A DNA stretch of 64,000 nucleotides from Vitrella brassicaformis CCMP3155 (Eukaryota > Protista > Chromerida), in the NCBI GenBank assembly GCA_001179505.1, contig CDMY01000850.1, forward strand, positions 124,001-188,000. The letters run 5' to 3'. The position numbers and the translations under genes are program-made. Positions 19,899 through 56,122 of the stretch are shown in pieces (position 1 is the stretch's first letter; each line of letters starts with the position of its first letter). The notes beneath the pieces are model-generated. The model saw only the letters and a list, made by a program, of their open reading frames with translations, had not been told where the DNA came from and did not search any database.

Positions 19899-22800
19899 TC
19901 ATTGAGGATTGAGCACACGACGGATGAATGACCTGATGACGGCAAAGTCGCCGATGCCCTTAAAGATGACCTCCCTGGCCGCATCGATCATTTTGGCCTC
20001 CACCATGGCCTCCTCGGATGCGTCGCTGTCTTGGGGCGGCTCCACCATGAGCAGCATGCTCGATCCAGATATGTGCAGCTGCACAAAACACAACAACGAC
20101 ACAGAGAGGGGCAACGCACACGTAAACCTGATGTACCCTCATCCCATCCTTGGCTGTCGTGTCAGTCGGTCACTCACCTCTTTGGTTCTCTTGATGACTT
20201 CGTGCAGTCTGTCTCCATGTCTCTGCTTCTTGTCGTCAGTCATCCTGCCCATCTGCTCCTCAATCGCAGACACCAGATCGGCAGAGTCCCACGACCGGGC
20301 AGCAGGATGGCCTCCCTCTCTCTGTCCACCACCACCACCGCCACCGGGCGGCCACTGGATGGACTGCTGCCGCTTGAGTGACCGGAGGAAGGACCGCAGC
20401 TGGGAGATGATGACCAGCGCGATGCCCTTCTGCAGGCCCAGCTCGCGGCGGATGTCCTCACAGGCATCCACGCTGCCGATGTTCTCCAGCATGTCTAGCA
20501 GACTCACGGCCGAGGTAATGTCCAACGCCTGCAAACACCATACGCCACCCATCCGCCTTGCTGTTTATGTGCATTCATTGTGTTGTGGTGACCTACCTAC
20601 CTCGATCTTGTCGGCAACGTGTTGCATGTCGGGTCGTGGGTCGGCCTTGAGCAGCTCAACCAGCTGCTCCCTCGTCAAGGCATCAAACGCAACGCCCTTG
20701 CCGCCACCCCCACCACCACCACCACCCTGCCCCTCCTTGACGGCATCCCCCACCACACTACCGCCCCGACCGCTGCCCATGTTGGGGTCCCGCTGTCGCT
20801 GAGGGACCTGCGGGTCGCGTGATGACATGCTCGCACCCATATCACCACTCCCACGACTCGGTGGCTTGCTGGCCTTCTTGGGTGCTGGTGGCTTCGGTCC
20901 TCTCTCGGCATCCAGCCGCGCGACGAATCGCTTGGCCGCCTCCAGGGTGCCCTCGTCATCGCCGCGACCCACGATCACAGGCACCTCTTTCCGCAGAAAG
21001 GTCTTGATGGCCGTGATGCTGCGGTTCGGGAAGGCCGCGAGGATCTCGCCCGCGTCGTTGCCCACCGTCGCAAACAGCCGACAGAAGGCCAGCCGATCAG
21101 CCTGTGTCCACTCCTGCTCCTGGTCGTCACCGTCCTCCATATCCTCTCGCTCTCGGCGCCGTGCCCATGCCGCATCGATGGCTGCCTCCATGGCTTGCTC
21201 CGTGGGGGCAGAGAGGGGGAAGGTCTCCACAGCAGCCGTGCCAGGGATGACCAGCTCGATGGCAACCCGCATCAGCCCCTGCCCCGCCTGCTCTCGCCTC
21301 AGCCTCAGGCAAAGGGCCCTGCTGTGCTTGGAGTCTGCGAATCTCTCGAGCTTGTTGTGGAAGATGCGATGCAGCTCCGTGAGTTGGGCGGGCGTCAGTG
21401 GAGGGCCGGTGAGGGGCGGCTGCTGGACCACCTCATTGGCGGCCTTGGGGGGAGGGGACGGCTGCTGCTTCTCTGGGCGGCGTTTGTCAGACTTGAGTCG
21501 CTTAGGGGTGGGCCTCATGTTGTCCTCGGACGAGGAGGAAGACGAGCTGCTGTCTTGGTGGTCGTCACGCGGTGGCTCGTGCATGGCGTCATCTCCCTCG
21601 GCCTCCTCTTCCTCCTCCTGGATACGTTTGAGCCAACTGGCGTCAATCATGACCGCCCTATCTCCCAGCTGCGACCCAAAAAACGCGTTGCGATGCTGGA
21701 TGGCCTGGTGAAGTGCCTCGAAGACTTCGCAGCGGGAATTGATGTCACTGACGATGAAGCGACGCCCGGAGGTGGTAGCTTGGGACGAGTAGTAGGTGCA
21801 GAAACTCCGAGAGGCCTTGTTCCATGTGATGCCCAGCCTGAGGAGGGGAAGCAAAACATCCAATCCAGACAATGACAGCCCGGTGCCCCTCGCCTCGTCC
21901 TTGGTCGCGTGTCCATGGCTGCTTACCCCCCGCTGCCACAGGTCCGCACGCCCCCCAGCTGCTGCTCTCGAATGCGCTGCAGCAAGGCCAGTGCCAGCCG
22001 CTTCCCCTCAAGGCCAGACAAGTCGACCACATCCCGCCCGCCGACAGGACCCCCGCCACTGCCTCTGCGACCTCGGCGGGTCATGGGGGGCAGCACACGG
22101 TCATCATCATCGTCATCACTTGTGTCCATCTGACGGCCCTCCGGCGATGGCGTCAACCGCTTGTGGCGCTTCAGACGGGGAGTGGCCAAAGGAGGGTCGT
22201 CGCCCATTGTTTCCTCCTCGCCTTGTAGCTGATGGAGCCAGTCCAGCTTGACGACTGTTGCTCGATCTCCCAGCTTGTCGCGATGGAGGCGGTTGCGGTG
22301 TGTGACGGCACGACGGAAAGCATCGATGATGGCCCCACGGGAGCTTAGGTCCGCGATTTTGAACAGCTCCTGCTGCGCGGTGTTGGAGAAGTAGGCTGCG
22401 AAAGCGCCACAGTACCACGTGAGGCCAAGTCTGCACACATACACATACACACGCACAGACACATGGCCCGACAGCTGATCTTCCCGTCGATTCCACCCTC
22501 TCAGACCTTACCCGCCGCTGCCATATTTCCTGAAGCCGTCCTCCCGCTCTTGTCGCGCCCGCTGAAGCAGAGATCTCGCAAAGGCATGCGCCGACTGCAG
22601 TGCCACCTGCGGCATCCCACGGCCCCTGACTCCACGAGCTGGCACACGGGCTGGGCGACGTTGCGGCGCGTTGCGGTGGCTGCTCCAGTAGTTGCCATCC
22701 AGGCCACGCTCGTCCCGATGCGCTGGGCTGGCACCGTCGAAGCGGTCCTCGTCGGATGAAAGACCATGACCATCTGATCCATCAGCATCGTCAGCACCTG

Positions 22801-25800
22801 CCGCCGATGCACGGCGCCCTCTCTCCAGAGCTTGGATGGCGGCCTGCATGGCACCGTTGTAGCCCAGCTGTGCGACCGAGAAGCGCCGGGCCTTCCTTTG
22901 GCCGCCCTGCTGCCAGCGGGCGAGCCACATGTTGTTTCCCTGATTGAAAGTGACGCCCCTCACGCCGCTCTGATGCTGTGATCGCACCTTCTGCCCCGCC
23001 CGCCCGGTGCGCTCCATCTCGCGACGATGGTGCTCTGCCAGCGCCTGGGAGCTCAATGGAAGAACAGGACAGCGTGCAATCCAGTTCAATGACGAATTGT
23101 CTTGCCTCGCCCTTTATACCTTTGCCTTGTTGAAGCCATGCTCGCTGATGTAGAAGTACTTGCTCTTCTGCCCGCCACCCTTCTCCGACCAATGCGCCAT
23201 CCAGGCCTGGTCCTGTTCATACCAACACACACCCACCACATCCGACTGGTGTGCGGCAGGACTGTGCGGCAGGCCGTGGGGCCTCGCCGATCGGCCATAT
23301 GGGGGGGCTGAAGGGCCGCTGCTGGCCTCTGCGTCTCTGTGGCGATGTTTGCGGGGTGGGCTGTCATCGAACGACTCGTCACGCGCCGACGGCCCTGCCT
23401 GTCTGAGCCACGAGATGTCGAGAGTCGTTGCCTGGTCACCGAGGAGGGAGCGGTGAAGGGCGTTCCGGCGGTGGACGGCCCGCTCGAATGTCTTGATGAT
23501 GTCCTCGGGAGAAGCCATGTCGGTGGGCTTGAAAGACTTGATGCGGACGTCGGTGCGATGGTCACAAAGGTAGGTCTGAAAGGCACGATTACTGCGGTTC
23601 CAGAAGATACCGCGCCTGAAGAATGCACACCCAACCCACCATACACAGTGACTTGTTGCCCGTTCCCCCCGCAGCTTGCTTCCTCCTCACCCGCCTCTGC
23701 CGTATGTGCTGAAATCGCTTGGCTGCTCCTGAGTGAGTCGCTCAAGGAGGGCTCTCGCCAACGCCTCGTCGGTCAGCCCACTGAGGCGGGTCTTCTCCCG
23801 CGATCGTTTGCCGCCAAAGATGTTCCGCTTTGAAGCAGGACTCGGATGCAGATCACGGCGGGGCTGCACGGACGGAATGTCACGCGGCCGCATGCGAATG
23901 GGGGGACGGGAAGCAGGGAGGTGGTCGTCTGGCCATTCCTTGTCGGAGTCGAGCCAGCTGATGTCGATCATGGCGGCTCGGCGGCCCAGCGCCGCTTTGT
24001 AGATCTCGTTGCGGCGTTGAACACACCGGCGAAACGCATCGATGATGTCAGCACGACTGACGACACGATGAAGGCCGAAGTAACCCGACAGAAACCCCCG
24101 ATTCCCTCGATTCATTTGGGCGTGAAAGCCATAAGTGGATCGCTTGCTGGAGGAGAATGAAACACCAACCCTGATTGAAAGAAAGGGACGCAATAAGATA
24201 CTGTTGTATGACACTATAGGGCTTGTCTTACCCGCCCCTGCCGTTCCGTGGGTGCACCTCCGGCTGCTCTTGACTGATACGGCGGACAAGTCGACGCCCC
24301 AACTCCTCGACCTCGGAGGGACGCATTGGGTCCGTGCTGCAGTGACCGACCTCACGCTGGCCATCGAGTGCCTCATCACGGTCACTTCCCAGCTCCTCCC
24401 CGTCGAGCCACGAGATGTCGACAGGGGTCGCATGGTCACCGAACCGGCTCTGCCAGAGGCCGTTGCGCTTCTCGACGGCCTCGCGAAACGCGCGGATGAT
24501 GTCGTCATTGGAATCGAGGTTCGCGACGGTGGTGAGTTGATGGTAGGTGCCGTTGACGAAGGCAGCGAAATCCCGCACACTGCGGACCCACACCATGCAC
24601 AACCTGAACACACACCCGATGCAGCATGGATGTGAGTATTCTTTGTGACCGGTCTCCTGTGTCCTCTGTGTCCTACTCACCGGCCCTTTGTCTGGTGTTG
24701 CTCGCGAGCACGGTCAATGAGGGCATTTGCCAGCGCACTGCCTGACAGGCCAGAGAGGCCGGTCCTCTGGTGTGTGCTGATTGAGTTGCGACCATCGACA
24801 CCTCCATCGCCATCGAACGCAGGTGGTCCCCTCTCCTTCACCGGTCCCCCGCTGCGACGCCGACGACTCTTCACGGGCGGACCCATGCCCTTCCGATGGC
24901 CCTCGTCCGCTGCCTGGCGCAAGTTGATGTGCCGGAGGTCGATCGTCGCCCCCTCGCCATGGTGGGCACGGAGGATGCTGTTGAAGTGCTGACAAGCTTG
25001 GGCAAAGGCCATGAGGAGTTGCTGCCGGGACGTCATGTCCGCCACGGGGAAGACACGCTCGGCCCGCCTGCCGGTATCATCCTCAGAGCGGTAGGCAACG
25101 AACTGCCGCTCGTGGGGGCGCCACTCCAGACCAATACTGCAAAAGACATTGATACGTGGGACAGCAAATTGAGCGTTCGTCCTCCATCCATCAAGCACAC
25201 GTTTTGCCCACCCACCTGTCGGCATCGCCGTTGAGCTGCTTCTTGGCCTGCCTCACCAAGAGGCTCGCCAGCGCCAGGCCATCCTCCTCACTCAACGGAG
25301 GCCGCACAGACTGCCGTCCTCTCTTCTCGGACCCATCATGTGGGCGCTTGACGCCGTGCGGGCAGTGGTCGGGTTGCTGATCGTCTTGCATCATCCCGCG
25401 TCGGCGTGTGCTGGAGTGGCGGCGATGTCGGGGCAGCCGTATGGAGAGAGGCATGTTGTCGTCGAGCCAGCCGATGGACAGCGGGACTGAGTCTTTTCCC
25501 AGATGAGTGGAGTGGAGCTGGTTGCGCTGTTGCACCGCCTGACGGAAAGCGGCCAGGATGTGCTGCTGGGATGGGGGTTCTGCCACGGGGACGTCCAGGA
25601 CGTACTGCCGGCCGTCTTCATAGGGGGACCGCACGAACACACGGAAGGAGCCAGATGACCAGCACAAACCGTACCTGAAGCAAGGAAGCAAGACGCAGGC
25701 AGGCACCAGGGGGTTTTCAATCAGTGAGTGGGTCTATATCGTCTCATGCGTGAGCGTTTCTTACCCTTCGCTGTTGCCATCTGCGAGTTGTGGGTGCTCC

Positions 25801-28800
25801 TCTCTCATCCGCCTCACGAGGGACGCCGCAAGATCGCCCTCGTCCAACTCACCCAGATCCAGATCAGTGTCGCGACGGCCATGGGCAGGCGACAACTGCA
25901 TCTTATCGCTCAAGCGGGTGTTGCGCTTGCTGGTCTTGGCTGTCTTGGCGGCGCGAGGAGGTGACAGACTGCCTATGCCGTCAGACGCGTCGGTCATCGG
26001 CTGCTCCTGCTCCTTCCCTCCCTCATCTTCCTCCTCTTGAAGCCCGTCCAGCCACGCGGTGTCGATGATGACCGCTCTCTCGCGATGGTAGGCACGGTGG
26101 GCGGCGTTGCGGTGCTGGATGGCCATCCTGAGGGCATCAATGATGGCGCTGCGAGAGGTGAAATCGGTGATGTGGAACAGCTTGTGTGTGCGGGCGTCCC
26201 TCCAAAGCCCGGACTGGAAGGCATTATATTGCCAGTACACTCCCAACCTGCCGCACGCACCACGAACAAGGGCAGAAGATCCAATGGGCGCGTGACCTCT
26301 GTCATTGCCCTGTCTGTCTGTCTGTCTGAGTTTCCTTACCCGCCAGTGCCCCGTGGAAAGACGACTCCCTTCTCTTGGAGCTCCTCCTTCAGCCGCACCA
26401 CCAGAGCTGCTGCAAACTCCTTCCCACGCGACGCAGTGCGCTGATCCACCGGACGTCTCGCTGGTCGACCCCTGCGATGACGCCGGACCGAAGCACCCGT
26501 CTCAGGCTCGTTCGTCGAGGAGAGACCTTGCTCCTCCCTCTCCTTTGCCCGCGTGAGCCGTGAAGCGTCGATCAGCACCGCCTGATCTCCGAAGTGCTCG
26601 CGGTGGAGGGCGTTGCGGTAGGCGAGAGCTTGCTGCGCCGCGTCGATGATGTCCGACCGAGATGACATGTCGGTGACCTTGAAGCCCCTCTTGCCGATTT
26701 GTGCTCCAGCGCCAGCAGCGATGTAGGCCTCGAACTTTTCTGTGCTATAATTCCACGTGAGGCCGACCCTGGTACACCGAGTACAGAGAACATGGTCACA
26801 AGAGATGCAGTCAGTAAGATATCGACGCCGGCTGGCAATCCTTACCCTCCACGACCCCTGAAATGCTCTGCAGGACCGAGTCGCCTCAGCAACGCTCGCG
26901 CAAGAGCTTCCCCCGTCAGCCCATCCAGCCCTGCCCCACCCAGCTGTCGAGCCATCTGTCGGGCCGCCACCATGCGCGACAGCTGCGTGGCGCCGGGCCG
27001 CTGGAGGCTTTGATGACGGGTACCAGGTGGGGAGAGAGGGCTCTCGGGCGATAGGTACCTTGCTGTGCGCCTTGTGTGATGGTGGCGGCCCCCTTGGCCT
27101 CCTTGCTGCTCCTCCACCTCTCCCCGTGTGAGGTTGATGAACGTCGCCTGGTCACCGAGAAATGTGCGGTGGAGGGCGTTTCGCCGCTCGACAGCCAGCT
27201 CGAAGGTCTTGATGATGTCTTCGCGCGGACCGTCGAGAGAGACTTTGAGTCCCTCTTGGCCGATCTTCACGTCCGACCTCCGAGAGACGTAGATCGCAAA
27301 CTCACCGTTGGTACGATTCCACGAGATCCCGACCCTGATCACGAAGCGCACAGGACATACCATGTATGATCAGACGACGTGGCAGCGGCTCCTTCCCGAC
27401 TCATCAGTGCTGGCCGACCTTACCCTCCACGGCCCATAAATGGCGAATGAGGACCGACTCGCCTCAGCAACGCTCGGACAAGAGCCTCCCCCGTCAGCCC
27501 ATCTGTCTGCCCGGTCGGCTGTGAGGCATCGCCACGTTGCTCGTGATGAGTGTCCGGTGGAGAGAGAGGCACGTCGGGTGCGAATCGCTCCTCGGGCGGT
27601 TTGGCACTGGGAGGCCCCACCCCAGATGGACGGCCAGGGGGCAGGGAGGTAGGGTGGGGCGGCTGGAAGGTGCTCAGCCCTGAATGCACACATACACACG
27701 TTATGTGATGTGTACCGATGCCCTCATCCCGTTCGTTGTCTTACCAGCAGGGCTCAGCTGCAGGACCCTTTGCACCTTGCCGTCGACTTCCACAGTGACG
27801 GTCTCGAAGCGGTCGTCAGTCTCGGCCACACCCTCGCGAATGGCCTTGAGCACTGCAGTGAGCCTGTTGGTGTCCCACCCTCTCTCCGCTCGGATGCACA
27901 ATGCACGAGCCCACAGTGTGTCGGGCCGTCCCCCATCGCGGGCGGTGACAATGAAGCGCTTCCCGTCGCCCTCATCCTCGACTGTGAAGTGCAGCCCCTC
28001 GTAGGCCACATGGTGCTTCCATCGGCCACCGGGGATGCCCTTCTGGCGAAGGACCTTCATAAGATGATCGCGAAGGGATGGAGGCGCCGAGGCCCTTCTC
28101 TCTGCCGATGAGGTGTCTGCTTCCATCCTCCTGGGGAGAGGATGGGGACGCTGTTCTGACGGGCTGGTCGTCTTGGGTGCTGGGGGTGGGGAAGGTGGTG
28201 GCAGTAGCGGTGGGGGCCCTTGATTCTGTGCGAGGGGAGGTGGTGGCGGTGTGCTGGGCGTCTCGGACAGCCGATGCTGCGGTGGTGGAAGCGAAAACGA
28301 ACCTGGAAACACACAAAGCCAACAAACCGTTGACATGCCTTCTGTTCCGCCCCCCCTCCCTCCTACCGGCAGTGTCTGTAGGTTGCTGCTGTGTCTTGGG
28401 CTTGCTCCTGGCCATTGCCGGTGCTCGCGGATCGTAGATGGCATCATCGTCCTCATCCTCGTCGCCGGTGATCTTGGCTGCTCGGCTGCCTAATTGCCTC
28501 TTCCTTTTGCGGGGTCGAGGGGCGGGAGGGGGACGCTGTTCTGATGGGTTGGCCGTCTTGGGCGCTGTGGGTGGGGGCGTTTGGTTTTGGGGGCGGGGCG
28601 GGCGTGTGTGTGTGTCTGGCGTCGTGGGCAGTCGATGTTGCGGTGGCGGAGGCGACAGTGGACCTGAGAAGACAACAGCAACGGACCATTGGCGTGTTTT
28701 CCTCTCTGCCTCTCTCCCTGCCCGCATACCGGCAGATGACTCCTTTGGGCAGAGTACCCGCTTGCCAAGTGTCATCCGCAGCTCAAACGGCTCATCTTGG

Positions 28801-29669
28801 CCTACCGGCCCACCAGCCCTGGCGCGCTCAAGCAAGGCTGTCAGCCGACGCAGATCCCAGCCGTTCTCCCCGTCACGCCGCACCGCGGGATCGCACACAT
28901 GTACCGCCTCGCCCTGGCTGTCATCTAGCGGCCCTGCCACCACGTGCAGAGCGTCACGAGAGTCCTTTGCGGGCCTCACGCCGAACTCTTGGACATCCCG
29001 ATAGGCCTGGTGGAACATGCGTAGGTCACCGGGGTCACTCCTCTTGTAAAGGATATCTCTCAAGGATTTGACCAGCGGGGCAGGCTGACTTGGGAGAGGT
29101 CGAGGGGCTCTGTGCTGATGGGGCGGTGACGGAATCAACGGATGCGCACGAGGGAGAGGCGCCGCCACCGGTGCCCGTGCACGCTGGCGAGCTGTCGCAT
29201 CAGCCAACGCTCCCTGCGTGGCTGCAGCCGCATCTCGGCGGCCTGGGCCTCGAGCACCACCACCTCCTCTACCACCACCACCACGACCAGCAGTCGCCCC
29301 GAGATGCCCTTGATTCGAGTATAGGGCGCGTGCGAGGGACCCCACACGCGGCTGCTGCAATGAACCGCCACCCGGATGGCAGTGACGACTGGCAGGGGTG
29401 GTCTCAGGCGTGCATGTGGCAGTGGGAAGCCGACTCTCCGGCTCAGGCACCGCAGCTGGTGCCGCAGCGGAGACCTTTGGCTGCGCATTGCCGAGAGCCG
29501 ATGTCGCAAGCATGGAAGAGGCGGGCGGGACGTCCTCAGCGGGCGAGGAGGACATAGCGGCAACACCCCCGACAGGAGGTGCCCTCGGGTGGACGGGATC
29601 TATCGACAGATCCGCTTCTGTTGCTGGGGCCGCGTCTGCCGAATGACGCAGGACTCCCGTAGGCTGCAT
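19899..29669 (-). CDS. Very large multi-AP2 DNA-binding protein: 2 copies of an unknown N-terminal domain, 10 divergent AP2-like modules, 2 canonical AP2, SANT/Myb-like, 2 SAM-like domains
   Basis: Phase-consistent chain of minus-strand exons. Canonical AP2s HQSDVVGVCWYEQDQAWMAHW...KSKYFYISEHGFNKAK|ALAEHHRREME and HQSGVRGVTFNQGNNMWLARWQQGGQRKARRFSVAQLGYNGAMQAAIQALE. Repeated modules begin G[IVL]xW. Confidence 0.8.
21837..27334 (-). repeat. Tandem array of exon-sized AP2-like protein modules (divergent at DNA level)
   Basis: Module exons start near 27334, 26768, 26247, 25674, 25136, 24603, 24146, 23615, 22430 and 21837. Shared motifs are IIxxFxxAVxxRNxLHxxxLGDxAxxIDxxWL and, before most junctions, LxGxxLAxALLxR...G[RTS]GG. 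Confidence 0.85.
27750..29070 (-). repeat. Internal duplication: Pro-rich segment plus a ~110 aa unknown domain, two copies
   Basis: DNA similarity gggacgctgttctgatgggttggccgtcttgggcgctg (~28530) vs ggggacgctgttctgacgggctggtcgtcttgggtgctg (~28145). Protein motifs SLRDxL and GWDxxRLTAxLxxxRxG...DxxFE occur in both copies. Confidence 0.75.
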
Positions 29670-55016: not shown

Positions 55017-56122
55017 ATGGCGCCCCCTCAGGGAGACGAAGGGGAGGATCTGGATGAGGACTGTGACGAGCCTCGGCCGACATCCTCCAAGCCACCCAAA
55101 AAGGTGCCCAAATCGGGCTTCCCCGGTGTCAGGTATGCGTGCAACATGGCGAGAAGGGGTGCTGTTGTATTCTCTGTGTGTGTCGTTTGCGTGACATGCA
55201 GTTGGAATAGCCGCATGGCCTCGTGGTTGGCGTTCTGGACGGAGCCGAGCGGCCAACGGAGGTCCAAGACCTTCAACACCAAAGGACAGGGAGTCGAGGT
55301 GAGCCAACAAGCCAGGGGAGGTGTACGATGATGGCTGAATGATGTAACGTGATTGTTGTCCAGGCTGCCCGCCTTGAGGCTGTTGAGTACCTGAAGCTCA
55401 AGAAGTCGCTTCTCGCCGCTGCACCGCGGCGACGAGCCGTGCGGCCGGAGGAGCAGGAGCAGCTAGAAGGGATCGAGGACGCGGGAGAGCCGCCAGGTGA
55501 CGAGTACCAACACTTCACCCGGTCCAAGGGCGCCGGCGTCCCCCTCCCCATCCGCCAGGAGGTGCCTGACATTGACGCCCTACAGCCGCCCATCAAGCGC
55601 GAGAACAAGAAGAATAAGCGGCACAAGAAGCGCGAGCAATTCGACTTCGGCTGCCCAGACGGCGAGGAGGACACGACGCCGTTTGGGTTGCTGGGGGGCG
55701 GGGGCGGGGAGAACGAGGGGCGGTCGAGCTCCTCCAGGGGCCAGCCAGTGGACTATTTCCCCTATGTGCGGGAGAAATACGCTTATGTCTACACAGAGGG
55801 GTCCGGCAGGAAGCGGGCAAGGGACGAGCTGGAGGCGGGGGCGACCGACGCGCCCTGCAAGCCGCTACTCGGCGGCACCCTGCTGGACCACCCGCCCATC
55901 TTCTACCCCCCCATCATCCAGCCGACAGGCGTGACGATGGGCACCAGCCTCGGGGGCGGAGGCGGTGGCCAGACCGCCGCGGCACAGTCCCTGGGCGGTT
56001 CGCGGCCGGTGGTTGAGGATTGCGATGCGCCAGAGGCGAGCAGCGGCGCGTACGGTGCGGCAGAAATGGAGCCGAGCGTCCTCTTTGAGCAGATTGTGCG
56101 TGGTGTCGTGGGTGGCATGTAG
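55017..56122 (+). CDS. ApiAP2 transcription factor, single N-terminal AP2 domain (3 exons)
   Basis: Spliced AP2 KSGFPGVS|WNSRMASWLAFWTEPSGQRRSKTFNTKGQGVE|AARLEAVEYLKLKK. Confidence 0.88.

What the first reader, a model, noticed from the sequence alone, without database searches (positions are those of the whole stretch)
21837..27424. Ten exon-encoded copies of an unusual AP2-like module in one protein
Seen in sequence: ten minus-strand exons, mostly ~370-500 bp. Nine begin G[IVLM]xW or a close variant (VGISW, VGLTW, LGVYW, YGLCW, IGLEW, LCMVW, RGIFW, LGLTW, LGITW); module 7 is degenerate. Each continues with a beta-rich stretch and the helix IIxxFxxAVxxRNxLHxxxLGDxAxxIDxxWL. After a variable linker, most carry a second helix LxGxxLAxALLxR and end G[RTS]GG. 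Established: AP2 domains start SGxxGVxW, and characterised ApiAP2 proteins usually carry only 1-3 domains. Inference: this is a polydactyl AP2-derived reader of long or composite DNA sites, analogous to C2H2 finger arrays. The two conserved add-ons (upstream helix, RNxLH...LGDxA tail) would define a module I do not recognise as a named family. The tail resembles the LxGxxAxLNF end of plant/bacterial AP2 more than the ApiAP2 end.
Basis: partly seen in the sequence, partly recalled or inferred. Interest (0 to 1): 0.88.

Follow-up and report, generated by a model that had tools for sequence, protein, structure and literature searches.

The report
Ten-module divergent AP2 array protein
One expressed gene of the alga Vitrella brassicaformis, a free-living relative of malaria parasites, strings ten copies of a very divergent, species-restricted version of the AP2 DNA-binding fold plus two ordinary AP2 domains into one protein, far more than the one to four described in parasite AP2 factors; whether the new copies bind DNA is untested.

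Summary
On the minus strand lies one 17-exon gene (annotated CDS 29018..19902; product CEM35342.1 / A0A0G4GWM4, 2622 aa, Vitrella brassicaformis). Ten exons each start a ~75-aa module, xG[ILV]xW/F. Module 7 (VGVSF) is not degenerate. Each module is found by a profile of the other nine at E 1e-12 to 1e-22.

Spliced contigs from two studies remove every intron at my predicted GT-AG sites. One 9.8-kb contig spans all modules.

Pfam and PDB sequence searches do not see the modules. Three other results link them to AP2:
- an AlphaFold model (pLDDT 85) gives helix, three strands, long helix;
- its best structural matches are AP2 domains (PfSIP2, Toxoplasma AP2 proteins, WRINKLED1);
- a profile-profile alignment to the family's canonical AP2 domains is in register and beats 200 of 200 shuffles.

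The module occurs in only about ten proteins among 1.84 billion representatives, all from Vitrella and, apart from one 232-aa partial record, each with canonical AP2 domains.

The "polydactyl DNA reader" idea is untested. The sheet region of the modules is not basic on average and the helices are the best conserved parts.

This scan has noted other poly-AP2 arrays elsewhere in this genome. Verdict: a new variant of a known kind, of moderate interest.

The parts
19902..29018 (-). Annotated coding region of the whole gene: 17 exons, product 2622 aa, CEM35342.1 / A0A0G4GWM4 of Vitrella brassicaformis CCMP3155.
   Evidence: Exact mapping of P0001 onto the window; identity of the protein.
27424..27679 (-). 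Exon before module 1. It encodes the upstream helix (LTGEALVRALLRRV) and the GRGG that completes the start of module 1.
26846..27334 (-). Module 1 exon (489 nt; core 27333-27094, VGISW), plus linker and the upstream helix of module 2.
   Evidence: splice joints 27333/27423 and 26767/26845 in RNA contigs.
26340..26768 (-). Module 2 exon (429 nt; core 26770-26528, VGLTW). The linker holds an RGRP AT-hook-like core.
   Evidence: This is the module modelled.
25765..26247 (-). Module 3 exon (483 nt; LGVYW).
25216..25674 (-). Module 4 exon (459 nt; YGLCW). This module type is also present in paralogs P0002 and P0009.
24681..25136 (-). Module 5 exon (456 nt; IGLEW). This module type is also present in P0002, P0003 and P0004.
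24232..24603 (-). Module 6 exon (372 nt; LCMVW).
23691..24170 (-). Module 7 exon (480 nt; VGVSF). It is not degenerate; this module type is also present in P0003.
   Evidence: (leave-one-out E 4e-12).
23120..23615 (-). Exon with module 8 (core 23614-23384, RGIFW) and the strands of canonical AP2 domain 1 (23263-23120). It ends in a phase-0 intron inside the AP2 helix.
   Evidence: (Pfam AP2 E 1.3e-09).
22512..23044 (-). Exon with the helix of canonical AP2 domain 1 (23047-22991), canonical AP2 domain 2 (22990-22799, SGVRGVTF) and the upstream helix of module 9.
   Evidence: (Pfam AP2 E 1.4e-10).
21927..22430 (-). Module 9 exon (504 nt; LGLTW).
   Evidence: Record 17 of run X4 is continuous across the 22431-22511 intron.
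20601..21837 (-). Exon with module 10 (core 21836-21603, LGITW), an acidic/basic linker, a weak SANT/Myb-like stretch and the start of the conserved C-terminal block.
19902..20528 (-). Last two coding exons (20528-20178 and 20078-19902). They encode the conserved helical C-terminal block shared with P0002 and P0009.
29019..29669 (-). Possible N-terminal extension. The frame stays open for 225 codons upstream of the annotated ATG, with in-frame ATGs at 29669, 29555 and 29513.
   Evidence: The RNA contig has about 2300 nt upstream of module 1, more than the annotated CDS needs. This is an inference.

Best explanation
Shown. This is one expressed, intron-rich gene for a large AP2-family protein, probably nuclear. 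Its ten repeats are a Vitrella-restricted, strongly diverged derivative of the AP2 DNA-binding fold. Each structural unit consists of an N-terminal helix (LxGxxLAxALLxR), a Gly-rich turn, a three-stranded sheet, an elongated helix (IIxAFxxAVxxRNxLH) and a tail (LGDxAxxIDxSWL). A phase-2 intron sits in the Gly codon just before strand 1. One exon therefore carries a core, a linker and the helix of the next unit. All single-module exons are multiples of three, which fits growth of the array by in-frame exon duplication. The duplications are old: modules share only 21-48% identity, and module types 4, 5 and 7 recur in paralogous genes.

Inferred. The canonical tandem AP2 pair between modules 8 and 9 provides the sequence-specific DNA anchor. 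The ten modules, joined by net-basic linkers, act as accessory binding beads, each with its own conserved surface. These add multivalent contacts to DNA, chromatin or partner proteins, giving a scaffold-type transcription or chromatin factor.
For: Gene and transcript:
- Splice model equals the public protein.
- A 9828-nt contig of run X4, and contigs from a second study (X5), remove the introns exactly at the predicted sites.

The repeat is real:
- Leave-one-out E 1e-12 to 1e-22.

AP2 origin:
- AlphaFold model with pLDDT 85 and pTM 0.80, elements H-E-E-E-H-H.
- VIA-align top matches are AP2 domains: 9i05_XH Z 5.6, 9hqv_Yn Z 5.5 over its AP2 domain, PfSIP2 6sy0 Z 5.4, WRINKLED1 Z 5.1, 9g6k_Lk Z 4.6. 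These are the top five of about 1000 chains and four of the top six of 48,161 chains. The AP2 identity of those chains was checked.
- Foldseek against AlphaFold DB clusters finds Vitrella paralogs (TM 0.80-0.83), then AP2/ERF proteins (rows 4, 5 and 30) at probability 0.92-1.00.
- hhalign of modules against the family's canonical AP2 domains is in register over 54 columns, score 19.0. Column shuffles give 9.2 +/- 2.1, and 0 of 200 reach the real score.

Family context:
- Every full-length protein with the module has canonical AP2 domains, in most as complete tandem pairs.
- The same phase-2 intron is present in paralogs, 4 of 4 modules checked.
- Module types are orthologous across genes, with support 96-100.
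- Linkers have net charge +1 to +6 in eight of nine cases.
Against: - No experiment bears on binding.
- Absolute structural Z scores are modest (about 5.5) and frataxin-like folds score nearly as high.
- Foldseek against PDB, Swiss-Prot models and the ESM Atlas gave nothing significant.
- Pfam AP2 does not match any module, even at E <= 10.
- The sheet region is not basic on average (-0.3 against +3.1 in canonical domains). Modules 4, 5 and 9 are acidic there.
- The helices are more conserved than the strands, which would fit a protein-binding rather than a DNA-binding surface.
- The transcript evidence comes from assembled contigs, not single long reads.
Confidence: 0.5

Rival explanations
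1. Polydactyl reader. Each module is itself a sequence-specific DNA-binding domain, and the array reads a long or composite site, as C2H2 finger arrays do.
For: - AP2 fold.
- Surface-facing strand positions differ between module types but are kept within a type across paralogs, for example GLEWR in all four type-5 modules.
- Modules 7, 8 and 10 have a basic sheet region, +3 to +5.
- Different AP2 domains of one ApiAP2 protein usually bind different motifs (PMC6631176).
Against: - Most modules lack a basic sheet, and three are acidic.
- The strands are the least conserved elements.
- Linkers are long and of variable length, unlike the short fixed linkers that let finger arrays read contiguous DNA.
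- Most paralogs carry only one module, next to canonical pairs.
Confidence: 0.2
2. Retired DNA binders. The modules keep the AP2 fold but now serve as protein-protein or RNA-binding scaffolds. The conserved helices form the working surface, as in the AP2-fold proteins built into the Toxoplasma mitoribosome.
For: - The upstream helix, main helix and tail are the best conserved parts.
- The sheet region is on average neutral.
- The closest solved structures include the mitoribosomal AP2 proteins. These do not use the canonical DNA-binding features (PMC11742926).
Against: - The protein also has canonical AP2 domains and a SANT/Myb-like stretch, and it lacks any detected organelle signal, so it looks like a nuclear factor.
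- The net-basic linkers fit nucleic-acid contact.
- Conserved helices may simply be the fold's core.
Confidence: 0.25
3. Not AP2-derived. The module is an unrelated small alpha/beta domain whose likeness to AP2 is convergent or an artefact of the prediction.
For: - No sequence-level hit to AP2 in Pfam or PDB.
- hhalign probability is only 9%.
- Z is about 5.5, with frataxin-like folds close behind.
Against: - AP2 chains are a tiny share of the PDB, yet they fill the top ranks in two rankings.
- The profile alignment is in register and beats all 200 shuffles.
- The module is found only in proteins with canonical AP2 domains.
Confidence: 0.04
4. The exons are separate genes, unexpressed, or a decaying pseudogene array.
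For: None found.
Against: - A 2622-codon frame free of stops across 17 exons.
- Spliced contigs in two independent studies.
- Conserved cores against unalignable linkers.
Confidence: 0.01

Closest known systems
ApiAP2 transcription factors of Apicomplexa and chromerids, such as PfSIP2 with its tandem AP2 pair (PDB 6sy0)
   Same: - Same fold in the model (Z 5.4 to 6sy0).
- The protein itself carries a canonical tandem ApiAP2 pair (Pfam E 3.8e-18).
- It belongs to the large paralogous AP2 expansion of Vitrella; Woo et al. 2015 report a cluster of 50 homologous genes.
   Different: - The ten modules fail the Pfam AP2 model.
- They have an extra N-terminal helix and a helix lengthened by the RNxLH..LGDxA segment.
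- Their sheet is not basic.
- Described ApiAP2 proteins have one to four domains (PMC6631176); this protein has twelve AP2-fold units.
Plant AP2/ERF domains (GCC-box binding domain 2gcc, WRINKLED1 7wq5, TEM1 7et4)
   Same: - Three strands plus a helix.
- Structural matches of Z 3.8-5.1; the match to 2gcc has 22% identity and reaches the end of that domain.
- The G..A tail motif looks similar, but this is a lead only.
   Different: - No sequence-profile hit.
- The Arg/Trp DNA contacts listed for plant ERF (PMC6631176) do not appear to be kept at the corresponding strand positions. This was judged by eye from the alignments; no plant sequence was aligned here.
AP2-fold proteins of the Toxoplasma gondii mitoribosome (9i05, 9hqv, 9g6k)
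   Same: - They are the best structural matches (Z 5.1-5.6).
- They are a precedent for AP2 folds used as scaffolds rather than as classic DNA readers (PMC11742926).
   Different: - Those are single-domain ribosomal subunits with long extensions.
- Here there is a ten-fold array in a protein that also has canonical AP2 domains and a SANT-like stretch.
C2H2 zinc-finger arrays (an analogy only)
   Same: - Many copies of a small nucleic-acid-binding fold in one chain.
- Growth by tandem duplication.
   Different: - Unrelated fold.
- Linkers here are about 50-95 residues and variable, not a fixed short linker.
- No evidence that each unit reads adjacent base pairs.
Other poly-AP2 arrays noted by this scan in Vitrella (s1-235826, s1-226915, s1-246546)
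   Same: Same genome, and the same theme of many AP2-type units in one protein.
   Different: - My profile of this module found only about ten proteins, so the other arrays are canonical or differently diverged AP2 types.
- This was not checked here.

Membership tests
AP2 domain (Pfam PF00847) | Match to the family profile above the gathering score. | tested here: not met
   None of the ten modules matches at E <= 10. Only the two canonical domains match.
AP2/ERF-type DNA-binding fold | Three-stranded antiparallel sheet followed by a helix that packs on it. | tested here: met
   AlphaFold model with pLDDT 85 and elements E34-40, E45-52, E56-64, H71-96. AP2 domains are the top VIA-align matches. 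AP2/ERF proteins are matched in AlphaFold DB clusters. This rests on prediction, not on a solved structure.
AP2/ERF-type DNA-binding fold | Sequence signature xGxxG[VIL]xW/F in strand 1, an aromatic residue in strand 2, and an Ala-rich helix, in register with known AP2. | tested here: met
   hhalign A2 against A3 aligns 54 columns in register, score 19.0, with 0 of 200 column shuffles reaching it. The GG at the end of the previous exon completes the signature.
AP2/ERF-type DNA-binding fold | Basic DNA-contacting face of the sheet. | tested here: inconclusive
   The mean net charge of the sheet region is -0.3 (range -5 to +5), against +3.1 for canonical domains of the same family. Modules 7, 8 and 10 are basic and modules 4, 5 and 9 are acidic. 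The first domain of each canonical pair is also weakly charged.
AP2/ERF-type DNA-binding fold | Sequence-specific DNA binding. | not testable with these tools
   Needs protein-binding microarray, DAP-seq or EMSA.
ApiAP2 protein family (whole protein) | At least one canonical AP2 domain in an alveolate protein. | tested here: met
   Two domains, whole-protein Pfam E 3.8e-18. The organism is Vitrella brassicaformis.
Polydactyl array in the zinc-finger sense | Short linkers of uniform length that allow contiguous reading of DNA. | tested here: not met
   Variable linkers are 16-60 residues, plus a helix segment of about 35 residues, between cores. One gap of about 270 residues holds the canonical pair.

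The most novel reading that the evidence does not exclude
The ten modules are a new, lineage-specific class of AP2-derived readers. Each has its own specificity, set by the variable sheet face that is conserved within each module type. The symmetric phase-2 exon cassettes let the alga build, and perhaps alternatively splice, long programmable DNA- or chromatin-recognition arrays. That would be a natural AP2 counterpart of zinc-finger or TALE arrays.
Probability: 0.12. Interest if true: 0.85.

Novelty: new variant of a known kind. Interest (0 to 1): 0.55.

Why it matters
AP2 proteins are the main specific transcription factors of malaria parasites and their relatives, and chromerid algae show what that toolkit looked like in a free-living cell. 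This gene shows three things.

- The AP2 fold in Vitrella has diverged beyond the reach of the standard profile.
- It has gained two conserved add-ons.
- It has been multiplied to ten copies in one chain through exon-sized cassettes.

Counts of AP2 domains based on Pfam or on an apicomplexan profile therefore undercount the family, at least in Vitrella.

The module offers a defined, testable case for asking which way a diverged AP2 fold goes: does it keep DNA binding, or become a scaffold, as already seen in the Toxoplasma mitoribosome? If the modules do read DNA, the array would be an unusual natural multi-domain reader.

Tried and rejected
- Pfam scans of each module exon, of the 80-aa cores and of the whole protein showed no family for the modules.
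- Profile searches of PDB sequences with A1 and A2 gave only chance hits: HCV polymerase and alanine racemase, E > 0.2.
- hhalign against a single canonical AP2 sequence was too weak (probability 4%). It improved with a 25-sequence profile.
- Foldseek against PDB and Swiss-Prot models gave nothing at E < 0.05, only uL18- and HrcA-like partial matches.
- The ESM Atlas shape search returned unrelated small alpha/beta proteins.
- P0010 and P0012 from the big profile search are spurious helix-only matches (TPR protein and others), and were rejected.
- An AlphaFold model of the C-terminal block from 3 sequences had pLDDT 43 and was unusable. The SAM-like idea therefore rests only on a language-model lead of score 0.83.
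- The N-terminal repeated domain gave no family in Pfam and no credible Atlas lead.
- A second run search restricted to the library word RNA listed nothing.
- A look-up of earlier findings by sequence was blank.
- I did not compute dN/dS between paralogous modules, because at 25-50% protein identity synonymous sites are saturated.
- I did not compare with plant or bacterial AP2 profiles, because no tool gave me such sequences and I did not type them from memory.

Full report
**What is there**

The window has about 60% G+C. Earlier scan notes name the genome as the chromerid alga Vitrella brassicaformis. I confirmed this when the gene product turned out to be CEM35342.1 / A0A0G4GWM4 of strain CCMP3155.

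Reading the minus strand shows clear GT-AG introns. Joining the exons from 27679 to 20601 gives 2064 codons without a stop. This translation is identical to residues 383-2446 of the public 2622-aa protein P0001, recovered later. The annotated CDS runs from 29018 to 19902 in 17 exons.

**The repeats**

Ten exons begin with xG[ILV]xW/F and continue with a core of about 75 residues (alignment A1). All ten score 1e-12 to 1e-22 in this leave-one-out test.

Every intron that precedes a module is phase 2 and lies in the last codon before the module, a Gly codon in most cases (the exons usually end G[RST]GG). The spliced sequence therefore reads xGGxG[ILV]xW, the same pattern as the SGxxGVxW start of AP2.

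The single-module exons measure 489, 429, 483, 459, 456, 372, 480 and 504 nt. All are multiples of three, so each could be duplicated or skipped in frame. This agrees with scan note s1-212183 on the same stretch.

The same intron is present before all four modules that I checked in two paralogous genes (loci L001 and L002). The exon cassette is therefore ancestral to the family.

Between modules 8 and 9 lies a canonical tandem AP2 pair that Pfam recognises (E 1.3e-09 and 1.4e-10; whole protein 3.8e-18). The first domain of the pair is split by a phase-0 intron inside its helix.

**Expression**

I laid public runs on 21750-27700. Run X4 holds one 9828-nt contig in which every intron of the stretch is removed exactly at my junctions (CT..AC on the plus strand). 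This includes the 22431-22511 intron, across which the contig's coordinates are continuous. Run X5, from another sample and study, has a 5672-nt contig with the same junctions from 21926 to 25112, and a second contig across modules 3-4. Runs X1 and X3 hold the unspliced DNA.

The modules therefore lie in one assembled transcript. The caveat is that these are assemblies, not single long reads. No exon-skipping joint was seen, but contigs drop rare forms.

**Is it AP2?**

Sequence searches say nothing:
- There is no Pfam family for any module, even at E <= 10.
- There is no PDB sequence hit.

Three other lines of evidence agree on AP2.

1. *Profile comparison.* A profile of 23 modules (A2) aligns with a profile of 25 canonical AP2 domains from the same protein family (A3) over 54 columns, in register: strand 1 on strand 1, F.AY on W.A.W, R.F.V on K.FSV, and helix on helix. 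The score is 19.0 and E is 0.0036. Reversed and column-shuffled controls give 9.2 +/- 2.1, with a maximum of 17.5 and 0 of 200 reaching the real score.
2. *Predicted fold.* An AlphaFold model of module 2 with its upstream helix (22-sequence alignment A4) has pLDDT 85.2 and pTM 0.80. Its elements in order are a helix at 12-23, strands at 34-40, 45-52 and 56-64, a long helix at 71-96 and a short helix at 103-109.
3. *Structural matches.* A Foldseek-independent comparison against 48,161 PDB representatives places AP2 chains at ranks 1, 2, 3 and 6. These are three chains of two Toxoplasma mitoribosomal AP2-containing proteins and PfSIP2 (Z 5.1-5.6). WRINKLED1, TEM1 and the GCC-box domain follow further down. 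Re-aligning Foldseek's top ~1000 chains puts five AP2 chains at ranks 1-5 (Z 5.6, 5.5, 5.4, 5.1, 4.6), ahead of everything else. I confirmed that these ribosomal chains contain AP2 domains by searching PDB sequences with the canonical profile; for 9hqv_Yn, 9g6k_LG and 9g6k_Lk the aligned range is the AP2 domain, while for 9i05_XH the residue numbering could not be reconciled. The paper on that ribosome describes them as AP2-fold proteins (PMC11742926). Foldseek against AlphaFold DB clusters returns two Vitrella paralogs (TM 0.83 and 0.80), then AP2/ERF proteins (rows 4, 5 and 30) at probability 0.92-1.00.

Against this:
- The absolute Z values are modest, and frataxin-like sandwiches score 5.0-5.3.
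- Foldseek against PDB, Swiss-Prot models and the ESM Atlas gave nothing significant.

I take AP2 descent as well supported, at about 0.9, but resting on prediction.

**Distribution**

The module profile was scored against 1.84 billion representative proteins and found 12 hits. Two are spurious helix-only matches. The other ten are all from Vitrella brassicaformis CCMP3155. No Chromera, apicomplexan or dinoflagellate protein reached E 0.001. AlphaFold DB adds at least two more Vitrella paralogs.

Every full-length member also has canonical AP2 domains, usually as tandem pairs; P0011 is a 232-aa partial record in which none was found. Three members add a PHD finger. In most members a single module sits about 100-140 residues upstream of a canonical pair; this gene has expanded the module to ten.

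A tree of the 23 modules groups module 4, module 5 and module 7 with specific modules of other genes, with support 96-100. The module types are therefore older than the gene duplications and have been kept distinct.

Woo et al. 2015 reported a cluster of 50 homologous apiAP2 genes in Vitrella, but described no such module (PMC4501334).

**How it may work**

What argues for nucleic-acid binding:
- the AP2 fold itself;
- the canonical pair in the same chain;
- net-basic linkers, +1 to +6 in eight of nine cases, with one RGRP AT-hook-like core;
- strand surface residues that differ between module types but are kept within a type.

What argues against a simple reader array:
- The sheet region averages -0.3 net charge, against +3.1 in canonical domains. 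Modules 4, 5 and 9 are acidic there.
- The strands are less conserved than the three helices: top-residue frequency 0.31-0.53 against 0.54-0.60.
- The linkers are long and variable.

My best reading, at 0.5, has two parts. The canonical pair is the specific anchor, and the modules are accessory, type-specific binding beads for DNA, chromatin or partners. The pure polydactyl reader (0.2) and the pure protein or RNA scaffold (0.25) remain open. Only binding experiments can separate them.

**Rest of the protein**

- Two copies of an N-terminal domain with no family, also found in P0004, P0005 and P0008.
- A weak SANT/Myb-like stretch (E 0.012, below the Pfam cutoff).
- A conserved helical C-terminal block shared with P0002 and P0009. 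It looks like two SAM-like units by eye and by a weak language-model lead, but it could not be modelled (pLDDT 43).
- The annotated start is probably too far downstream. The frame is open for 225 codons further up, with three ATGs, and the first copy of the N-terminal domain begins before the annotated Met. The RNA contig also extends far enough.

**Novelty and score**

The gene and its two canonical AP2 domains are already in public annotation. The ten modules, their AP2 origin, their add-ons and their exon-cassette layout are not described in Pfam or in the papers I could search.

ApiAP2 proteins are described as having one to four AP2 domains (PMC6631176); this protein has twelve AP2-fold units. 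The scan has already noted other poly-AP2 arrays in this genome (s1-235826, s1-226915, s1-246546), so arrays as such are a theme of Vitrella. This module family, however, is distinct.

I rate it a new variant of a known kind, with interest 0.55.

Noticed in passing
window 29019-29669 (minus strand): The reading frame stays open for 225 codons upstream of the annotated start codon (29018), with ATGs at 29669, 29555 and 29513. The first copy of the N-terminal repeated domain starts before the annotated Met, so the public protein is probably truncated at its N-terminus.
   Followed up: partly
window 27743-29018 (minus strand; P0001 residues ~1-110 and ~262-385): Two copies of a domain of about 110 residues (SLRDxL...GWDxxRLTAxL...) with no Pfam family. 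It is also present in paralogs P0004, P0005 and P0008. Function unknown.
   Followed up: partly
window 19902-20680 (minus strand; P0001 residues ~2415-2622): A strongly conserved helical C-terminal block (59-62% identity to P0002 and P0009) that looks like two SAM-like units. Support is only a weak language-model lead, and the AlphaFold model failed (pLDDT 43).
   Followed up: partly
window ~20980-21115 (minus strand; P0001 residues ~2275-2317): A weak SANT/Myb-like stretch (Pfam Myb_DNA-binding E 0.012, below the cutoff), conserved in P0002 and P0004.
   Followed up: partly
window 55200-55313 (plus strand): A weak match to the canonical AP2 profile (local HMM E 7e-05; Pfam AP2 E 0.042, strands only). 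This may be another AP2-type gene in the window.
   Followed up: partly
window 26308-26330 (intron between modules 2 and 3): A (CAGA)n microsatellite in the intron. Many contigs of all four runs break here with loose ends, and one contig shows a 1-nt deletion at 26308. This is an assembly-breaking simple repeat and is not part of the coding sequence.
   Followed up: no
L001 (paralog P0002, CDMY01000367.1) and P0003/P0004: Paralogs combine the same module with up to seven canonical AP2 domains and a PHD finger. Module types 4 and 5 appear in the same order as in this gene.
   Followed up: partly
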